64,000 bases of DNA, from the sequence record LR756501.1; one strand, given 5' to 3'. This document shows, piece by piece, positions 7,221 through 49,777 of this stretch. Every line of letters begins with the position of its first letter. Position 1 is the first letter of the stretch. Position numbers and translations under genes: made by a program. The notes under the pieces are model-generated. The model was not told where the DNA came from. It was given only the letters and a program-made list of their open reading frames with translations, and searched no databases.

Positions 7221-7751
7221 TTAGAATTCAATATCATATAAATCTAACTCTTCTACTATCATAACACTATCGTTATAACTAGATGCCATTTTGTAACAAT
7301 CAATTAATTCACTTGCTGTTCTAGGTCTTAAAATAGGAAAAGATACTAATTCTTTCATAGCTTCTGTGAAGTCTTGTGTATGAGTAGGGCCAGTTAAAAA
7401 TGGTGATAATCTTCTACCTATACAAGTTCTTATTATAACTTTTGGTTTATATTGGTTTTCTGATATGATTTTAAATTTATCAAGGTGATTAACGATAGCG
7501 TCTAAAGCGTTTAGGATGAAATCGAATCTTTCCACGAATAAAACTGGTTTATATCCTTCTATGGATAAACCCACTGATAATCCAGCCATTAGATTTTCGG
7601 CTAAAGGAGTTTCTATAAGTTGTTCTGTATTTATTGTAGATAGTGTGCCACCAGCTTTACCACCGTATTTGATACCGTAACCAAGGAACAATGTTTTGTT
7701 GTCTTTGGCTAGTAATTCCATTGATTCTATAATTGCTTGTTTATATTTCAT
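7221..7751 (-). CDS. TPP-dependent enzyme, E1-beta/transketolase pyrimidine-binding subunit
   Basis: IETPLAENLMAGLSVGLSIEGYKPV, GPTHTQD. Confidence 0.85.
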   Translation of the reverse strand: MKYKQAIIESMELLAKDNKTLFLGYGIKYGGKAGGTLSTINTEQLIETPLAENLMAGLSVGLSIEGYKPVLFVERFDFILNALDAIVNHLDKFKIISENQYKPKVIIRTCIGRRLSPFLTGPTHTQDFTEAMKELVSFPILRPRTASELIDCYKMASSYNDSVMIVEELDLYDIEF

Positions 7752-20567: not shown

Positions 20568-21359
20568 ATGGTAAAAAATTTTGATAAATTCGTAAGAGAG
20601 GCGTTAGATAATCCTCAAGTTATAGCCAAACCTAAAGTAAAAGGTGGCCCTGATCCACGTAGATTCAATAGTATTATTGATTACACTTATCTTCGTGAAG
20701 ACGCTAACATAGATAAGATTGAAGAGATATGCCAACAGGCTAAAGAGAACGGATTTTATAGTGTTTGTATAAGACCTGATTTCGTATCATACGCTGTTAA
20801 TTTCTTAGAAGGAACAAATGTTAAAGTGTGTACTGTTATTTCTTTCCATAAAGGCGAAGACAAAACACAAGAAAAAGTTGTAGAAACACAAAAAGCTATA
20901 TCTAATGGTGCTGACGAGATTGATATGGTTATGAATTGGAAACTTTTACAGAAATGGTCAAAAGAATCAGACGACGAAAAGAAGAAAGACATGGAACAAA
21001 AGTTATTTGACGATATAAGAAAAGTAGCTGATGTATGCCACGGATCGGATAGTGTTGTATTAAAAGTTATTATTGAGTCTGGCGAATTGACTTTGGATCA
21101 AGTGAAAAAGGCTTGTGAACTTTGTACCAAGGCTGGTGTAGATTTTGTTAAGACTTCAACTGGTTACGCTACAAAAGGAGCTGAAATAGATAAAGTTAGA
21201 TTTATGAGAAGTATATTACCAGACCATATTAAAATTAAAGCCAGTGGTGGTGTAAGAACTTTACAAGATATAGAAGCCTATGTTAACGCTGGTGCCGATA
21301 GAGTAGGAACTTCCTCAAATCCAGCTATTATAGCAGTGGGACAACAAGGAGGTTACTGA
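20568..21359 (+). CDS. deoC: deoxyribose-phosphate aldolase with N-terminal extension
   Basis: IDYTYL, GADEIDMVMN, LKVIIESGEL, DFVKTSTG, IKASGGVR, RVGTSS. Confidence 0.95.
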   Translation: MVKNFDKFVREALDNPQVIAKPKVKGGPDPRRFNSIIDYTYLREDANIDKIEEICQQAKENGFYSVCIRPDFVSYAVNFLEGTNVKVCTVISFHKGEDKTQEKVVETQKAISNGADEIDMVMNWKLLQKWSKESDDEKKKDMEQKLFDDIRKVADVCHGSDSVVLKVIIESGELTLDQVKKACELCTKAGVDFVKTSTGYATKGAEIDKVRFMRSILPDHIKIKASGGVRTLQDIEAYVNAGADRVGTSSNPAIIAVGQQGGY

Positions 21360-39335: not shown

Positions 39336-39899
39336 TCATACGTTCTCAATTAATAATCTTCTTTGAATAATCAAATCTGCCAATTCCCTTACAAAATCAA
39401 GATTGGAAATAGAAAGAGCCATCGGAATAATATACTGTTCAGTCTGATCAAGATATTGTGCTATCTTACCAGATGTATGTGTATCTAAGTGCATATCAGT
39501 AAGATTACTGATTCTATCAGCACATTTCAAAATTTTAGCCCTCTCTGAACCAGTTTCTAAAATTCTTTTAAGATAGTCAGCCTTAGGCTCTTCTTTACTT
39601 TTAGATACTTCTTTCACCAAATCGATAACTGCCTGACCGTCACCATCTAAATTACGAATAGCATCCATTTGCTCCAATCCCCAATCTTCAAAGAGGTCGT
39701 GAAGTAAAGACGCTTTAAGTAAAACAGAATCATCGAAGTACTTGTAGTCTAACAAGATACCTAATGTTGCGAATTGGTGTCTGAATTGATTTCCACCACA
39801 TTTACGCTTCACGCCAATAAGGGTTGTTGCCTTAATGATGTAAGGAGCTAATACGAATTTGTCGAAAAATTGGTCCATATCTTTTGGATTTAAACTCAA
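39336..39899 (-). CDS. stand-alone HD-domain hydrolase, SpoT/Mesh1 (p)ppGpp hydrolase-like
   Basis: R..G.QFRH, ASLLHDLFED, LVKEVSK, KCADRISNL. Confidence 0.8.
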   Translation of the reverse strand: MSLNPKDMDQFFDKFVLAPYIIKATTLIGVKRKCGGNQFRHQFATLGILLDYKYFDDSVLLKASLLHDLFEDWGLEQMDAIRNLDGDGQAVIDLVKEVSKSKEEPKADYLKRILETGSERAKILKCADRISNLTDMHLDTHTSGKIAQYLDQTEQYIIPMALSISNLDFVRELADLIIQRRLLIENV

Positions 39900-41404: not shown

Positions 41405-42085
41405 TTAATTTAAAAGTTCTAACTTACCTTTTTGTATATCTTTCCATCTACAAGATTTTCCTGTAATATGGTCAGTTATTATATCATCTTTTATACGATA
41501 AGTTCGTCTTTTATTTCCTCTTCCAAATGTTCCAACTTGATCGTTTCTTCTATCTTCAACTTTATTATAGTGTTTTTCTTCTTCTATTTTTTTAAGTTTT
41601 TCAGATAGCCTTTTATAAGCAAGTTCCTCATTTTTAGCTTGGTACCTTGTCTCTTCACATCTTACCATTATACCTGTTGGTTTATGAGTAAGTACGACAC
41701 ATGAGTGGATTCTATTTACATTTTGTCCACCTTTGCCTCTACTACATGTATAGGTTTTTGATATTTCGTCAAGATTTAAGTTGAAATTTACTTTGTCTTC
41801 TGGGTTCATTATCGCCACTTTGACGATACTTGTTTGAGTTCTACCGTTTCTCTCTGTTGGGGGTACTCTTATGAAGCAGTGTGATCCACTTTCGTTTGCG
41901 TAAAATTTGTTTACGCTATCACCTTCTATTCATATCGAAGCAAAACCGTCTTTGACTTCAACTACTCTTCAATTGAAATTTTGGTTTTTTGCTGATCTGA
42001 TATAAATATCCATAAGATCTACCACTAATAGTTTTGAATCATTACCTCCCTCGGAAGCCATGATTTCGATTTGAATCTTTTTCAT
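41405..42085 (-). CDS. RF1-like peptide chain release factor (domain-1-less) with two in-frame UGA codons (41969-41971, 41930-41932)
   Basis: Single frame MKKIQIEIMASEGGNDSK...NFN*RVVEVKDGFASI*IEGD...ESGSHCFIRVPPTERNGRTQTS...SRGKGGQNVN...RTY; ORF track shows only the last 137 aa. Confidence 0.85.
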
Positions 42086-42110
42086 TTTATTTATTTTTAT
42101 TTTTTATTAA

Positions 42111-42329
42111 TTAATTACAGGCGTTCCAGCCATTTCTATCTAATTTCTTTAACATTTTATAAGTGTTATCATCCACTATATCTAATTCGCTGTAAGTTGT
42201 TTTACTACTAATTACAACAAATCCTTTCTTCTTCTTTGCTCCTGAATGTTCCACACAAGTCTCAGCGTTTGGTAACGCCTTAATTCTGCCTTCTGGAATT
42301 TCTTCACCGCAAACTTTACAATACTTCAT
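42111..42329 (-). CDS. TraR/DksA C4-type zinc finger protein
   Basis: YCKVCGEEIPEGRIKALPNAETCVEH. Confidence 0.8.
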   Translation of the reverse strand: MKYCKVCGEEIPEGRIKALPNAETCVEHSGAKKKKGFVVISSKTTYSELDIVDDNTYKMLKKLDRNGWNACN

Positions 42330-42351
42330 TAATTCAATTATTTATTTTTTG

Positions 42352-42424
42352 AGCCGGTGAGAGGACTTGAACCTCCAACATCTACTTTACGAAAGTAACG
42401 TTCTCCCAATTGAACTACACCGGC
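42352..42424 (-). tRNA. tRNA-Thr(CGT), isolated from the array
   Basis: Full cloverleaf: GCCGGTG/CACCGGC, loop TT-CGT-AA, TTCAAGT. Confidence 0.93.
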
Positions 42425-42854: not shown

Positions 42855-43760
42855 TTACATCCATTTCTTAAATTTGAAATACGAAAACATTCCAATTATC
42901 ATAGCTAACATTAAACCACCTAGATACATATAAAATTGATCGTGATCCTGAAAAGGTATTTTAATATTCATACCGTAAAGATTAGCTAAGAACGATATAG
43001 GTAACAAAATTGAAGATACTAAAGCTAAAATCTTCATCACTTCATTCGTCTTATTCACCTGCAAAGAGTCAAATGTTGTGCTGTAACCTTTAATAAGTTC
43101 ACCAGCGTCTTCAACAGTGTCCCATATATTCTGGTAATAGTCATGTATATTACCCCAATAATTTCCCATATCTTCAGCAAATCCTCTAATCGCCCCATTA
43201 GTTAGTTTACTAAAAATAGCCAACTGTGGTTTGAACATTGTATTCATCACAATAACATTTTTTCTAGTAATACTAATATGTTCAATTATCTTTTCAGCTC
43301 TTTTACCAAAGATAGATTTACCACATTTATCAACCTCTTCGTCAATCCTATCAACTAATTGCTGAGTAGCCTTCATAACTTTATCAAGTAAAGTATAGAG
43401 AAGCATATCAGAACTTGTTACTACCATTCTTTTATCAGGTGTTAAGGATTTTTCCTTATCAAATTCTTGAGTAAACAACCAATGTGTTTTACCAATAGTT
43501 ACAAGAAAATTGTTACCCCAAAATATTTTTACCTCTTTAATATCTACTACTGTTCCAGATTTATCTATATACGGAAAATGTAAATTTAAGAAGTAGTAAC
43601 CGTCATATGTATCAACCTTCGGATGAAGACTATTTGTTTTACAGTCTTCCATAGCAAGAGGGTGAAAATTATAAGCGTCTTTTATTTCTGTAAATTCTGC
43701 GTTAGTTGGTTTAACAAGATGTTCCCACGTAACACCGCCATAGTTTATTCTTCCAATCAT
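42855..43760 (-). CDS. corA: CorA family Mg2+/Co2+ transporter
   Basis: FHPLAMED, PKVD.Y, NEVMKIL, LYGMN, two C-terminal TM helices. Confidence 0.92.
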   Translation of the reverse strand: MIGRINYGGVTWEHLVKPTNAEFTEIKDAYNFHPLAMEDCKTNSLHPKVDTYDGYYFLNLHFPYIDKSGTVVDIKEVKIFWGNNFLVTIGKTHWLFTQEFDKEKSLTPDKRMVVTSSDMLLYTLLDKVMKATQQLVDRIDEEVDKCGKSIFGKRAEKIIEHISITRKNVIVMNTMFKPQLAIFSKLTNGAIRGFAEDMGNYWGNIHDYYQNIWDTVEDAGELIKGYSTTFDSLQVNKTNEVMKILALVSSILLPISFLANLYGMNIKIPFQDHDQFYMYLGGLMLAMIIGMFSYFKFKKWM

Positions 43761-46117: not shown

Positions 46118-46202
46118 TGGAGCGGCTAGTGAGAATCGAACTCACATCCTCGGTTTGGAAGACCGACATAATCTGCTTTTGGCTCCATTATACGATAGCC
46201 GC
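46118..46202 (-). tRNA. tRNA-Gly(TCC) with about 12-nt D-loop insertion
   Basis: GCGGCTA/TAGCCGC-T-CCA, TCGGT-CT-TCC-AA-ACCGA. Confidence 0.8.
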
Positions 46203-46323: not shown

Positions 46324-46422
46324 AGCGAAGAAAAGGATTCGAACCTTTGACTACCCACCAAATTCATCTGCACTTAAACAGTATGGCTGATCATGGCAAT
46401 TTTCCCACTAAACTACCTCCGC
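46324..46422 (-). ncRNA. tRNA-like RNA with 33-nt expanded anticodon loop
   Basis: Acceptor GCGGAGG/TCTTCGC, D and T arms normal, TGCCA/TGGTG enclosing 33 nt. Confidence 0.65.
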
Positions 46423-47404: not shown

Positions 47405-47479
47405 TGGTGGAAAGAATGAGATTCGAAATCATACCGCCCCAGCATCCACCGGGGTCTTCTAACATTAAACTACCTTCCC
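47405..47479 (-). ncRNA. tRNA-like RNA with non-canonical anticodon loop
   Basis: GGGAAGG/TCTTTCC-A-CCA, CCCCGG-TGGATG-CTGGGG arm. Confidence 0.55.
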
Positions 47480-49708: not shown

Positions 49709-49777
49709 TGGATCTTCGGGATTTGAACCCGCCCTTTTGTTTGCGAGACAAACGTGCCTCCCTTACACTTTAGACCC
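49709..49777 (-). tRNA. tRNA-Ala(CGC), slightly degenerate
   Basis: G3:U70, TTTGT-CT-CGC-AA-ACAAA. Confidence 0.75.

What the first reader, a model, noticed from the sequence alone, without database searches (positions are those of the whole stretch)
41405..42085. RF1-like release factor gene carrying two in-frame UGA codons in an otherwise code-11 genome
Seen: one uninterrupted frame gives a 226-codon class I release factor (domain 1 absent, GGQ intact, RF1-type PxT motif 'RVPPT'), with TGA at codons 39 and 52 and no frameshift or decay. Other genes here use TGA as a real stop (e.g. deoC 21357-21359, ATGA overlaps at 7748, 8395, 19651) and encode Trp as TGG, so this is not genome-wide recoding. 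Established: prfB uses an internal UGA as an autoregulatory sensor, and UGA-recoded phages carry RF1. Inference: the protein is made only when UGA termination fails (RF2 depleted or inactivated, or a suppressor tRNA expressed late). This would be a double-stop AND gate controlling a ribosome-rescue or recoding factor.
Basis: partly seen in the sequence, partly recalled or inferred. Interest (0 to 1): 0.85.

Follow-up and report, generated by a model that had tools for sequence, protein, structure and literature searches.

The report
Stop-gated release factor gene in phage
A 735-kb phage carries a shortened RF1-type translation-termination factor gene interrupted by two in-frame UGA stops, and about nine in ten of its relatives in phages and bacteria carry a stop or a prfB-style +1 frameshift site at the same place, so this looks like a conserved, apparently undescribed control on a release-factor gene rather than damage.

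Summary
Window 42085..41405 encodes a 226-codon RF1-type factor that lacks domain 1. It has PPT and GGQ motifs, TGA at codons 39 and 52, and a TAA terminator.

The window is part of LR756501.1, a 735,411-bp uncultured huge phage. In the whole genome:
- 198 of 982 predicted ORFs end in TGA.
- No other gene has a coding-like in-frame TGA.
- Neither ARAGORN nor Infernal finds a tRNA with a UCA anticodon.

The stops are not decay. Of 85 phage homologues, 78 carry a recoding signal within the first ~55 codons at three hot spots:
- in-frame TGA, rarely TAG and never TAA;
- or a prfB-like +1 frameshift cassette, GGAGG-NNN-CTT-TGA-C or CTT-TAG-C.

Of 80 bacterial copies, 71 do the same. The region upstream of and between the stops has dN/dS of 0.07-0.29.

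Best reading: synthesis of the full-length factor depends on failure to terminate at UGA, so the gene senses termination capacity in the way prfB does, and two stops would sharpen the response. A late suppressor tRNA is not supported. What decodes UGA, and which codons the product reads, remain untested.

Papers I could search state that RF1 genes lack programmed recoding, and RefSeq splits one family member at its stop.

Verdict: new variant of a known kind, high interest.

The parts
41405..42085 (-). RF1-type class I release factor gene lacking domain 1: 226 sense or UGA codons plus TAA
   Evidence: Translation. Pfam RF-1 domain E 1e-26 and PCRF. NCBIfam RF1 E 9e-42. PDB RF1 E 6e-26.
41972..42085 (-). 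Segment 1, codons 1-38 (MKKIQIEIMASEGGNDSKLLV...), the start of RF domain 2
   Evidence: Matches RF1 profile positions 104-139. Under purifying selection in relatives.
41969..41971 (-). In-frame TGA, codon 39 (AAT TGA AGA, fourth base A); hot spot A
   Evidence: The same column is TGA in about 20 related loci. The closest relatives have Y, F or C there. It aligns with I39 of L086 and with a Leu of T. maritima RF1.
41933..41968 (-). Segment 2, codons 40-51 (RVVEVKDGFASI)
   Evidence: In frame with segments 1 and 3. Homologous to the uninterrupted relatives.
41930..41932 (-). In-frame TGA, codon 52 (ATA TGA ATA, fourth base A); hot spot C
   Evidence: TGA occupies this column in most of the AT-rich clade. 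Other members have TAG there or a CTT-TAG +1 site.
41408..41929 (-). Segment 3, codons 53-226: the rest of domain 2, domain 3 and domain 4
   Evidence: RF1 profile positions 161-332, E 9e-42.
41855..41863 (-). P75-P76-T77, the RF1-type PxT 'anticodon' tripeptide
   Evidence: Aligns with P184-V-T186 of T. thermophilus RF1. Nearly invariant in the family.
41723..41731 (-). G119-G120-Q121, the peptidyl-tRNA hydrolysis motif
   Evidence: Sequence GGT GGA CAA. Invariant in alignment A1.
41405..41407 (-). TAA, the true terminator of the gene
   Evidence: Most of the AT-rich clade also ends in TAA.
42086..42110 (-). 25-nt A+T-only spacer before the ATG, with no Shine-Dalgarno sequence
   Evidence: Read directly. 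This fits the Bacteroidetes host predicted for this phage group (PMC7162821).
42111..42329 (-). Upstream neighbour on the same strand: 72-aa DksA/TraR C4 zinc-finger protein
   Evidence: Pfam PF01258, E 7e-8. It also lies upstream of the gene in L021.
42351..42424 (-). tRNA-Thr(CGT), a recurrent upstream neighbour of the gene
   Evidence: A tRNA-Thr(CGT) also lies upstream in L021, L030, L033, L036 and L037.

Best explanation
The gene encodes a minimal RF1-type class I release factor (domains 2-4 only). Its full-length synthesis is gated by programmed recoding at two UGA codons early in the reading frame.

Proposed mechanism, all of it inferred:
- A ribosome reaching UGA-A at codon 39, and again at codon 52, is either terminated by host RF2, releasing a 38- or 51-residue peptide, or reads through, most likely by near-cognate tRNA-Trp or tRNA-Cys.
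- The yield of factor therefore rises steeply as UGA termination becomes inefficient. Two sites multiply the effect.
- The product would then take over UAA termination (75% of this phage's stops) and UAG termination, freeing RF2 and closing a negative feedback loop.
- This is the logic of prfB autoregulation, carried out here by readthrough rather than by a +1 frameshift.

Shown: the stops are real, specific to TGA, unique to this gene in the genome, and conserved across a family that otherwise uses prfB-type frameshift cassettes at the same place.

Not shown: readthrough itself, RF2 as the sensed quantity, and the codon specificity and role of the product.
For: 1. The two TGAs and the collinear RF1 homology are real.

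2. The genome uses the standard code. Of 982 ORFs covering 93% of 735 kb, stops are TAA 740, TGA 198 and TAG 44. A scan for coding-like upstream extensions through a stop returns only this gene for TGA. The other apparent in-frame TGAs were antisense artefacts.

3. No tRNA(UCA) was found, by ARAGORN (59 tRNAs) or by the Rfam tRNA model over the whole genome. There is no second RF homologue in the genome.

4. Family-wide conservation. Of 85 phage loci, 78 have a recoding signal in the first ~55 codons:
- 21 with two in-frame TGAs;
- 20 with one in-frame TGA;
- 20 with CTT-TGA +1 sites;
- 10 with CTT-TAG +1 sites;
- 7 mixed or in-frame TAG;
- 6 with none and 1 unclear.
Of 80 bacterial copies, 71 have a signal: 42 CTT-TGA, 19 CTT-TAG, 9 in-frame TGA and one shift of another kind.

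5. All 30 distinct phage frameshift sites have CTT before the stop. The GC-rich lineages read cGGAGGGGTCTTTGAc, which is the prfB cassette (prfB motif in PMC3711429 and PMC10798248).

6. Internal stops are never TAA in intact genes. The fourth base after in-frame TGA is C 22, A 26, G 1, T 0. Genuine TGA stops of this genome have A 87, T 72, C 22, G 17. +4U strengthens termination and +4C weakens it (PMC5289835).

7. dN/dS in the region upstream of and between the stops is 0.07-0.29 in 12 pairs. Synonymous divergence there is lower than in the rest of the gene in 10 of 11 usable pairs.

8. In related readthrough-type loci, flanking ORFs still end in TGA (40 of 201).

9. An uninterrupted family member folds with pLDDT 92 and best matches ribosome-bound RF1 (TM 0.84). 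Domain 1 is dispensable for codon recognition and peptide release (PMC1586002).
Against: - There is no direct evidence that the UGAs are read through, or by what.
- Near-cognate readthrough of two successive UGAs would give a very low yield unless RF2 is strongly limiting.
- Across the family, TGA and TAG sensors swap between close relatives. The family-wide signal may therefore be 'any weak stop' rather than RF2 specifically, or the product may read more than RF1's codons.
- The genome carries two tRNA(CUA) amber suppressors, and 11 related loci have one 1-2 kb from the gene. This link is not explained by the model.
- No conserved RNA structure surrounds the sites.
- tRNA finders can miss odd suppressors: only 35% of TGA-recoded phage genomes had a detectable one (bioRxiv 10.1101/2021.08.26.457843).
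Confidence: 0.6

Rival explanations
1. Direct autoregulation. The factor has drifted from RF1 specificity and itself recognises UGA, or all three stops. The in-frame UGAs (and the TAGs in relatives) would then be sensed by the product exactly as in prfB.
For: - TGA and TAG sensors interchange between sister lineages that share the same cassette.
- The decoding region differs from canonical RF1. The middle residue of PxT is Pro. The position of T. thermophilus H193 is Gln. The position of Q181 is Ile, Val or Leu in the window's subclade.
- From memory: Lak phages of the same broad clade encode RF2-type factors.
Against: - The Thr of PxT and the overall profile are RF1-like: RF1 143 bits against RF2 104 bits.
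- No SPF motif is present.
- Nothing here measures specificity.
Confidence: 0.15
2. Temporal code switch. A phage or co-infecting suppressor tRNA reads UGA as Trp late in infection and switches the gene on, as proposed for recoded phages.
For: - This is the published model for TGA-recoded phages that carry RF1.
- Suppressor tRNAs are often missed by detection tools.
- The phage has unusual tRNAs, including a tRNA-Trp(CCA) with a U11-A24 pair and a C31-C39 mismatch. From memory, A24 is the Hirsh UGA-suppressor change in E. coli tRNA-Trp. This is a lead only.
Against: - No tRNA(UCA) was found in 735 kb by two methods or near the gene in 52 relatives.
- No other gene has an in-frame TGA, and 198 genes rely on TGA to stop.
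- Orthologues with +1 frameshift cassettes need no suppressor.
- In Jade phages the RF1 gene is written in standard code.
Confidence: 0.1
3. Split products. The TGAs are true stops. The functional products would be a short N-terminal peptide and a separately initiated C-terminal GGQ protein, for example the 137-aa ORF from GTG at 41818, acting like ArfB.
For: - A 137-aa ORF with a GTG start exists at 41405-41818.
- RefSeq annotates a Variovorax family member as two genes.
- ArfB-like GGQ-only proteins exist.
Against: - The three segments are collinear with one RF1 domain 2/4 fold, which needs both ends.
- Six phage relatives encode the same protein without interruption.
- Frameshift-type orthologues have no start codon in the downstream frame near the site, yet have a CTT-T slippery codon with GGAGG at prfB spacing.
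- The ArfB score is far below its cut-off: 35.9 against 100.
Confidence: 0.08
4. Recent pseudogene or assembly error.
For: One relative (L042) does show downstream decay, with TAA at codons 140 and 149.
Against: - Only TGA occurs, at positions shared with dozens of homologues at 40-70% identity.
- dN/dS is well below 1.
- There are no frameshifts in the window copy.
- An independent assembly has both stops.
Confidence: 0.02

Closest known systems
prfB (RF2) autoregulatory +1 programmed frameshift
   Same: - A release-factor gene is interrupted early by an RF-specific stop, and failure to terminate there allows synthesis.
- Orthologues of the window gene carry the same cassette: SD-like GGAGG, a 3-nt spacer, then CTT TGA C (PMC3711429, PMC10798248).
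   Different: - The window gene needs no frameshift. It has two in-frame UGAs.
- The protein is RF1-type (PPT, not SPF) and lacks domain 1.
- The site lies in domain 2 (codons ~35-55), not at codon 26 of domain 1.
- TAG is used in about a quarter of the family's frameshift sites, whereas it was found in 0 of 8,164 prfB motifs (PMC12421855).
Canonical RF1 (PrfA)
   Same: - PxT and GGQ motifs.
- Best profile, sequence and fold matches.
   Different: - The ~100-residue domain 1 is absent.
- H193 is replaced by Gln, and Q181 by Ile, in the window copy.
- RF1 genes are reported to lack programmed recoding (PMC12421855; PMC1586002).
PrfH (RF-H) of the RtcB2-PrfH ribosome repair module
   Same: A class I RF homologue without domain 1 that has GGQ.
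   Different: - The PrfH profile scores 64.7 bits against a cut-off of 166.65.
- Fold match TM is 0.61, against 0.84 for RF1.
- No RtcB neighbour is present.
- PrfH lacks the RF1 decoding motif that is kept here.
Code-change module of TGA-recoded Jade phages (RF1 + TrpRS + tRNA-UCA; Borges et al.)
   Same: A phage-encoded RF1-type factor linked to UGA decoding.
   Different: - There the RF1 gene is written in standard code and the late genes carry in-frame TGA.
- Here only the RF gene carries TGA, the genome uses TGA as a stop, and no tRNA(UCA) or TrpRS module was found.
Readthrough-based autoregulation of plant eRF1, and UGA readthrough in phage Q-beta A1 protein
   Same: Leaky stop codons tune or sense termination (PMC5397192, title and abstract only; Q-beta from memory).
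   Different: - These are different proteins and kingdoms.
- In plants the stop is the normal terminator and is coupled to mRNA decay.
- In Q-beta the readthrough extends a coat protein rather than gating a factor.

Membership tests
Class I release factor, RF1 type (PrfA) | GGQ motif in domain 3 | tested here: met
   G119-G-Q121.
Class I release factor, RF1 type (PrfA) | PxT decoding tripeptide (SPF in RF2) | tested here: met
   P75-P-T77 aligns with P184-V-T186 of T. thermophilus RF1.
Class I release factor, RF1 type (PrfA) | N-terminal domain 1 (contacts RF3 and the L11 stalk) | tested here: not met
   The protein starts at RF1 profile position ~104 of 347. All 85 phage relatives also start there.
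Class I release factor, RF1 type (PrfA) | Curated NCBIfam equivalog score | tested here: not met
   143 bits against a cut-off of 400 for the longest piece. The shortfall is partly due to truncation and to searching the pieces separately.
Class I release factor, RF1 type (PrfA) | Domain 2/4 plus domain 3 fold | tested here: met
   Tested on an uninterrupted relative (L086), not on the window protein. pLDDT 92, TM 0.84 to ribosome-bound RF1.
Class I release factor, RF1 type (PrfA) | UAA/UAG-dependent peptide release | not testable with these tools
   Needs a biochemical assay.
prfB-type programmed +1 frameshift | CTT-TGA-C slippery/stop site with an upstream SD-like element and the downstream frame at +1 | tested here: not met
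   The window gene is in frame across both TGAs. The feature is met in 30 phage and 61 bacterial orthologues.
PrfH | TIGR03072 score and an RtcB partner gene | tested here: not met
   64.7 bits against 166.65. No RtcB among the 10 neighbouring genes.
ArfB | GGQ domain plus a C-terminal tail, ~140 aa, with no decoding domain | tested here: not met
   35.9 bits against 100. A decoding domain is present.
Stop-codon-recoded phage (code 4) module | Suppressor tRNA(UCA) | tested here: not met
   None found by ARAGORN or Infernal in 735 kb.
Stop-codon-recoded phage (code 4) module | Many genes, especially late ones, with in-frame TGA | tested here: not met
   Only the RF gene has one. 198 ORFs end in TGA.
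Programmed stop-codon readthrough | Leaky stop context and a conserved coding sequence on both sides | tested here: met
   Fourth base is A or C in 48 of 49 distinct TGA sites and never T. dN/dS is 0.07-0.29 upstream of and between the stops.
Programmed stop-codon readthrough | A demonstrated readthrough product | not testable with these tools
   Needs a reporter assay or proteomics.

The most novel reading that the evidence does not exclude
A widespread third family of bacterial-type class I release factors exists in huge phages, in Myxococcota and Betaproteobacteria, and on plasmids. It is RF1-like and lacks domain 1.

Its production is governed by release-factor-sensitive recoding, which evolution has implemented interchangeably as:
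- single or double in-frame UGA or UAG readthrough;
- SD-dependent or SD-independent CUU-UGA/UAG +1 frameshifting.

The window gene would be the double-UGA version: an ultrasensitive sensor of termination capacity that lets a giant phage top up termination during infection. As far as the literature I could search shows, this would be the first programmed recoding in an RF1-type gene, and the first natural case of a gene gated by two stops.
Probability: 0.55. Interest if true: 0.9.

Novelty: new variant of a known kind. Interest (0 to 1): 0.85.

Why it matters
- prfB has been the single textbook case of a release-factor gene that senses its own activity through recoding. Recent surveys state that RF1 genes do not do this, and that TAG never appears in the prfB motif (PMC12421855).
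- This family breaks both statements. It also shows readthrough and +1 frameshifting as interchangeable solutions at one site.
- It gives a tractable system for three questions: how termination capacity is sensed, what a domain-1-less RF does, and how huge phages manage host translation.
- The family is a natural source of stop-gated switches.
- It is an annotation problem too, because pipelines currently split or pseudogenise these genes.

Tried and rejected
- **Genome-wide code 4.** Rejected from ORF coverage, stop usage and TGG counts.
- **Other in-frame TGAs in the genome.** Ten candidates from a hexamer coding score all lay antisense to long genes.
- **ARAGORN's tRNA with a 'ttac' 8-nt anticodon loop as a possible suppressor.** The Infernal alignment shows tRNA-Lys(UUU) with a 17-nt insert after position 37. 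A 111-nt tRNA-like gene beside tRNA-Trp has the loop UUCAGCU, giving anticodon CAG.
- **ARAGORN at relaxed thresholds.** It returned 389 'genes', which is noise.
- **My own hairpin and T-arm scan for UCA loops.** It missed the known tRNA(CUA) genes and one of the two tRNA-Trp genes, so I discarded it.
- **A conserved RNA structure around the stops.** None was found: 0 predicted pairs in 29 sequences. The single-sequence fold had z = -1.8.
- **ORF-coverage test for TAG or TGA recoding in the short related loci.** It is uninformative for GC-rich loci and ambiguous for AT-rich ones.
- **My first alignment, made from memory, of codon 39 to the conserved Trp of RF1.** It was off by two residues and was corrected from tool alignments.
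- **Structure prediction of the window protein itself.** Not attempted, because the tools take no protein read through a stop. An uninterrupted relative was used instead.

Full report
**1. Observation**

The feature is on the minus strand. The reverse complement of 41405-42085 translates as one frame of 226 codons ending in TAA. TGA is at codon 39 (41969-41971) and at codon 52 (41930-41932).

Because the tools take no protein read through a stop, I searched the pieces separately:
- Residues 2-37 match positions 104-139 of the NCBIfam RF1 model.
- Residues 53-223 match positions 161-332 (E 9e-42).
- RF1 scores above RF2, PrfH and ArfB.

The pieces are collinear with one RF1, and the gap between them fits. 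Nothing corresponds to the first ~100 model positions, so domain 1 is absent. P75-P-T77 aligns with the PxT tripeptide P184-V-T186 of Thermus thermophilus RF1. G119-G-Q121 is the catalytic motif.

**2. Where the window comes from, and which code it uses**

The window is identical to part of LR756501.1 (and its twin LR756503.1), an uncultured phage of 735,411 bp. This is the largest genome in the 'huge phage' survey. That survey predicted Bacteroidetes hosts for the five genomes above 634 kb (PMC7162821).

In the window:
- 23 of 88 ORFs end in TGA, and TGG is used 261 times.
- ORF 20568-21359 is a DeoC-family aldolase ending in TGA.
- Every in-frame TGA other than those in the RF gene sits at an ORF's end or upstream of its start.

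I fetched the rest of the genome and stitched it together without conflicts. A simple gene model gives 982 ORFs covering 93% of the genome. Their stops are TAA 740, TGA 198 and TAG 44.

I then scanned for upstream extensions that look coding, pass through one kind of stop and are not explained by a neighbouring gene. For TGA this returns exactly one gene in 735 kb, the release factor. For TAG and TAA it returns none. A second scan with 30-codon flanks produced only antisense artefacts.

**3. No UGA suppressor**

ARAGORN finds 59 tRNAs, none with a UCA anticodon, and no tmRNA. The Rfam tRNA model, run over the whole genome, adds a few odd tRNA-like genes but none with a canonical UCA loop. The genome holds only one RF homologue, so the phage has no RF2 gene of its own. 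ARAGORN on 52 related loci also found no tRNA(UCA) beside the gene.

**4. The stops are a family trait**

Four other huge-phage genomes encode homologues at 37-56% identity. Three of them carry in-frame TGA: one at the window's codon 52, one at that column plus another, and one at the other column. All five genes end in TAA.

A scan of viral contigs added 80 loci. Across all 85 phage loci, every gene starts at domain 2. Of the 85, 78 have a recoding signal within the first ~55 codons, at three hot spots:

| Signal | Loci |
|---|---|
| Two in-frame TGAs | 21 |
| One in-frame TGA | 20 |
| In-frame TGA plus in-frame TAG | 3 |
| In-frame TAG only | 2 |
| +1 frameshift at CTT-TGA | 20 |
| +1 frameshift at CTT-TAG | 10 |
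| In-frame TGA plus CTT-TAG shift | 2 |
| Uninterrupted | 6 |
| Unclear | 1 |

Further properties of the sites:
- In the frameshift type, the N-terminal ~37-54 codons lie in the frame one base upstream and end in Leu(CTT) plus a stop.
- All 30 distinct phage frameshift sites have CTT before the stop.
- The GC-richer lineages read cGGAGGGGTCTTTGAc. That is the prfB cassette: an SD-like element, three bases, then CUU UGA C.
- The junction Leu|Asp matches the uninterrupted relative L096 residue for residue.
- No start codon lies in the downstream frame near the site, which argues against stop-restart coupling.

A scan of bacterial genomes found the same domain-1-less family, mainly in Myxococcota (including the complete genome of Minicystis rosea, and Nannocystis) and in Betaproteobacteria, and on Variovorax and Cupriavidus plasmids. 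Of these 80 loci, 42 have CTT-TGA sites, 19 have CTT-TAG sites, 9 have in-frame TGA, one needs a shift of another kind, 7 have no signal and 2 are unclear.

RefSeq annotates the Variovorax copy as a 56-aa hypothetical protein followed by a 'peptide chain release factor-like protein'. The gene has been split at its in-frame TGA.

**5. Selection and context**

- dN/dS in the 52 codons upstream of and between the stops is 0.07-0.29 in 12 pairs, so this stretch is translated in this frame.
- The window and L021 differ there by 2 synonymous changes and no replacements. The rest of the gene has diverged (pS 0.64).
- In 10 of 11 usable pairs, synonymous divergence is lower in this stretch than downstream. 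This suggests either nucleotide-level constraint or recombination. The pairs are not independent, so I treat it as suggestive only.
- Internal stops are never TAA in intact genes.
- The base after in-frame TGA is C 22, A 26, G 1, T 0. The genome's real TGA terminators have A 87, T 72, C 22, G 17. +4U strengthens termination and +4C weakens it, and UGA-C is part of the prfB sensor (PMC5289835).
- In the closest relatives, the column of codon 39 holds Tyr, Phe or Cys. In L086 it holds Ile, and in Thermotoga maritima RF1 it holds Leu. The column of codon 52 is variable (Ser, Lys, Glu, Phe). Insertion of Trp or Cys by a near-cognate tRNA would therefore be tolerated.
- No conserved RNA structure surrounds the sites.
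- In related readthrough-type loci, flanking ORFs of at least 100 aa end in TGA in 40 of 201 cases, so those phages also use TGA as a stop.

**6. Phylogeny**

On a tree of 72 distinct C-terminal sequences:
- The basal lineages are mostly uninterrupted; one basal pair (L095, L098) carries a single in-frame TGA.
- The GC-richer clades use CTT-TGA shifts, with occasional TAG.
- A well-supported AT-rich clade (42 rows, support 100/99), which includes the window, uses in-frame TGA, with CTT-TAG shifts interleaved.

One reading, which is inference, follows from the fact that Bacteroidia ribosomes ignore SD sequences and shift poorly on prfB (about 7%; PMC10798248). Phages of such hosts may have replaced the SD-driven shift with readthrough or with an SD-less CUU-UAG site. 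The 25-nt A+T-only leader of the window gene fits an SD-independent host.

**7. What the protein is**

An uninterrupted relative (L086, 226 aa) folds with pLDDT 92. Its best structural matches are ribosome-bound RF1 (TM 0.84). RF2 scores slightly lower and PrfH much lower (TM 0.61).

Published work holds that domain 1 is not needed for stop recognition or hydrolysis and mainly serves RF3-driven recycling (PMC1586002).

The decoding region is RF1-like, with three differences:
- The middle residue of PxT is Pro.
- The position of T. thermophilus H193 is Gln.
- The position of Q181 is Ile in the window, and Val or Leu in its subclade.

From memory of the RF1 and RF2 termination complexes, Q181 helps accept G at the third stop position, and RF2 has Val there. 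A UAA-only specificity is therefore a hypothesis worth testing, not a result.

**8. Mechanism**

The most economical account of all these facts is that early, weak, RF-specific stops gate synthesis of the factor. When termination at the stop is efficient, only a short peptide is made. When it is slow, the ribosome reads through (window type) or slips +1 (orthologues) and makes the factor.

For the window gene the sensed activity would be RF2, the only factor that reads UGA. If the product reads UAA/UAG, it relieves RF2 of the UAA load, which is 75% of the phage's stops, and that closes the loop indirectly. Two stops multiply the dependence.

Three things remain open:
- whether the loop is indirect or direct, that is, whether the product reads UGA;
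- what decodes UGA;
- when during infection this matters.

The swapping of TGA and TAG between close relatives, and the unexplained link to tRNA(CUA) genes, are the main loose ends. There are two such genes in this genome, and one lies 1-2 kb from the gene in 11 relatives.

**9. Known or new**

- The recoded-phage work describes RF1 in TGA-recoded Jade phages, but written in standard code, beside a TrpRS and a tRNA(UCA).
- The 2025 prfB survey states that programmed frameshifting is shown for prfB but not for prfA, and that TAG never occurs in the prfB motif.
- A reviewer comment in the PrfH paper says the same of the RF1 family.
- Five full-text searches found no description of this family or of its recoding.

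I therefore class it as a new variant of a known kind: prfB-like control, but in an RF1-type domain-1-less family, with readthrough (single or double) as an alternative to frameshifting. The library does not cover subscription journals, so I cannot fully exclude prior description.

**10. Verdict**

It is wrong or unsupported on the suppressor-tRNA branch, and untested on RF2 as the trigger. The real finding is larger than the window: a conserved recoding hot spot in a whole family of release-factor genes.

Noticed in passing
LR756501.1 record 690585-690738 (+), outside the window (locus L018 10886-11039): Two adjacent tRNA genes with a CUA anticodon (amber suppressors) lie far from the other tRNA clusters. 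Yet no coding-like in-frame TAG was found in the genome, and TAG ends only 44 of 982 ORFs.
   Followed up: partly
Loci L055, L063, L065, L066, L067, L070, L071, L074, L075, L087, L101, about 1-2 kb downstream of the RF gene: A tRNA(CUA) gene is a recurrent neighbour of the RF1-like gene in one AT-rich subclade. tRNA-Met genes lie upstream, and tmRNA genes occur in L066 and L069. The link between an amber suppressor and an RF1-type factor is unexplained.
   Followed up: partly
LR756501.1 record 204243-204333 (-) (L009 5043-5133): A 91-nt tRNA that ARAGORN calls 'ttac' with an 8-nt loop. Infernal aligns it as tRNA-Lys(UUU) with a 17-nt insert after position 37, the canonical intron site.
   Followed up: partly
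LR756501.1 record 204050-204160, 207096-207213 and 228902-229090 (-): Oversized tRNA-like genes of 111 and 118 nt flank the two tRNA-Trp genes. Two further tRNA-like genes have 6-nt anticodon loops.
   Followed up: partly
window 46127-46192, 46324-46422, 47408-47479, 49709-49777 (-): Four extra tRNA-model hits (31-39 bits) lie in the window's tRNA cluster and are not called by ARAGORN at default settings. One is 99 nt long.
   Followed up: partly
LR756501.1, locus L018 38460-38691 (-): A group I catalytic intron (Rfam RF00028, 96 bits).
   Followed up: no
window 39339-39899, 42114-42329, 42858-43760 (-): The RF gene sits among a SpoT-like HD_4 domain protein, a DksA/TraR zinc-finger protein and a CorA Mg2+ channel, next to a 16-tRNA cluster. 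The neighbourhood looks devoted to translation and stringent-response control.
   Followed up: partly
LR756501.1 record 204163-204235 (-) (L009 4963-5035): One of the two phage tRNA-Trp(CCA) genes has a U11-A24 pair and a C31-C39 mismatch. From memory, A24 is the change in the E. coli Hirsh UGA suppressor. This is a lead for what might read UGA and was not tested.
   Followed up: no
NZ_LR594667.1 (Variovorax plasmid), locus L180 3779-4483: RefSeq splits the family member at its in-frame TGA into a 56-aa 'hypothetical protein' and a 'peptide chain release factor-like protein'. A SecB gene follows.
   Followed up: yes
window 41930-42085 compared with L021 2345-2500: The first 52 codons differ by only 2 synonymous changes between the window and L021, while the rest of the gene is about 64% identical in protein. 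This is either a mosaic or strong nucleotide-level constraint. The same tendency, lower pS in the N-terminal part, appears in 10 of 11 pairs.
   Followed up: partly
locus L042 (IMGVR_UViG_3300035208_002042): This relative has both TGAs but also TAA at codons 140 and 149, so it looks like a genuinely decayed or mis-assembled copy.
   Followed up: no
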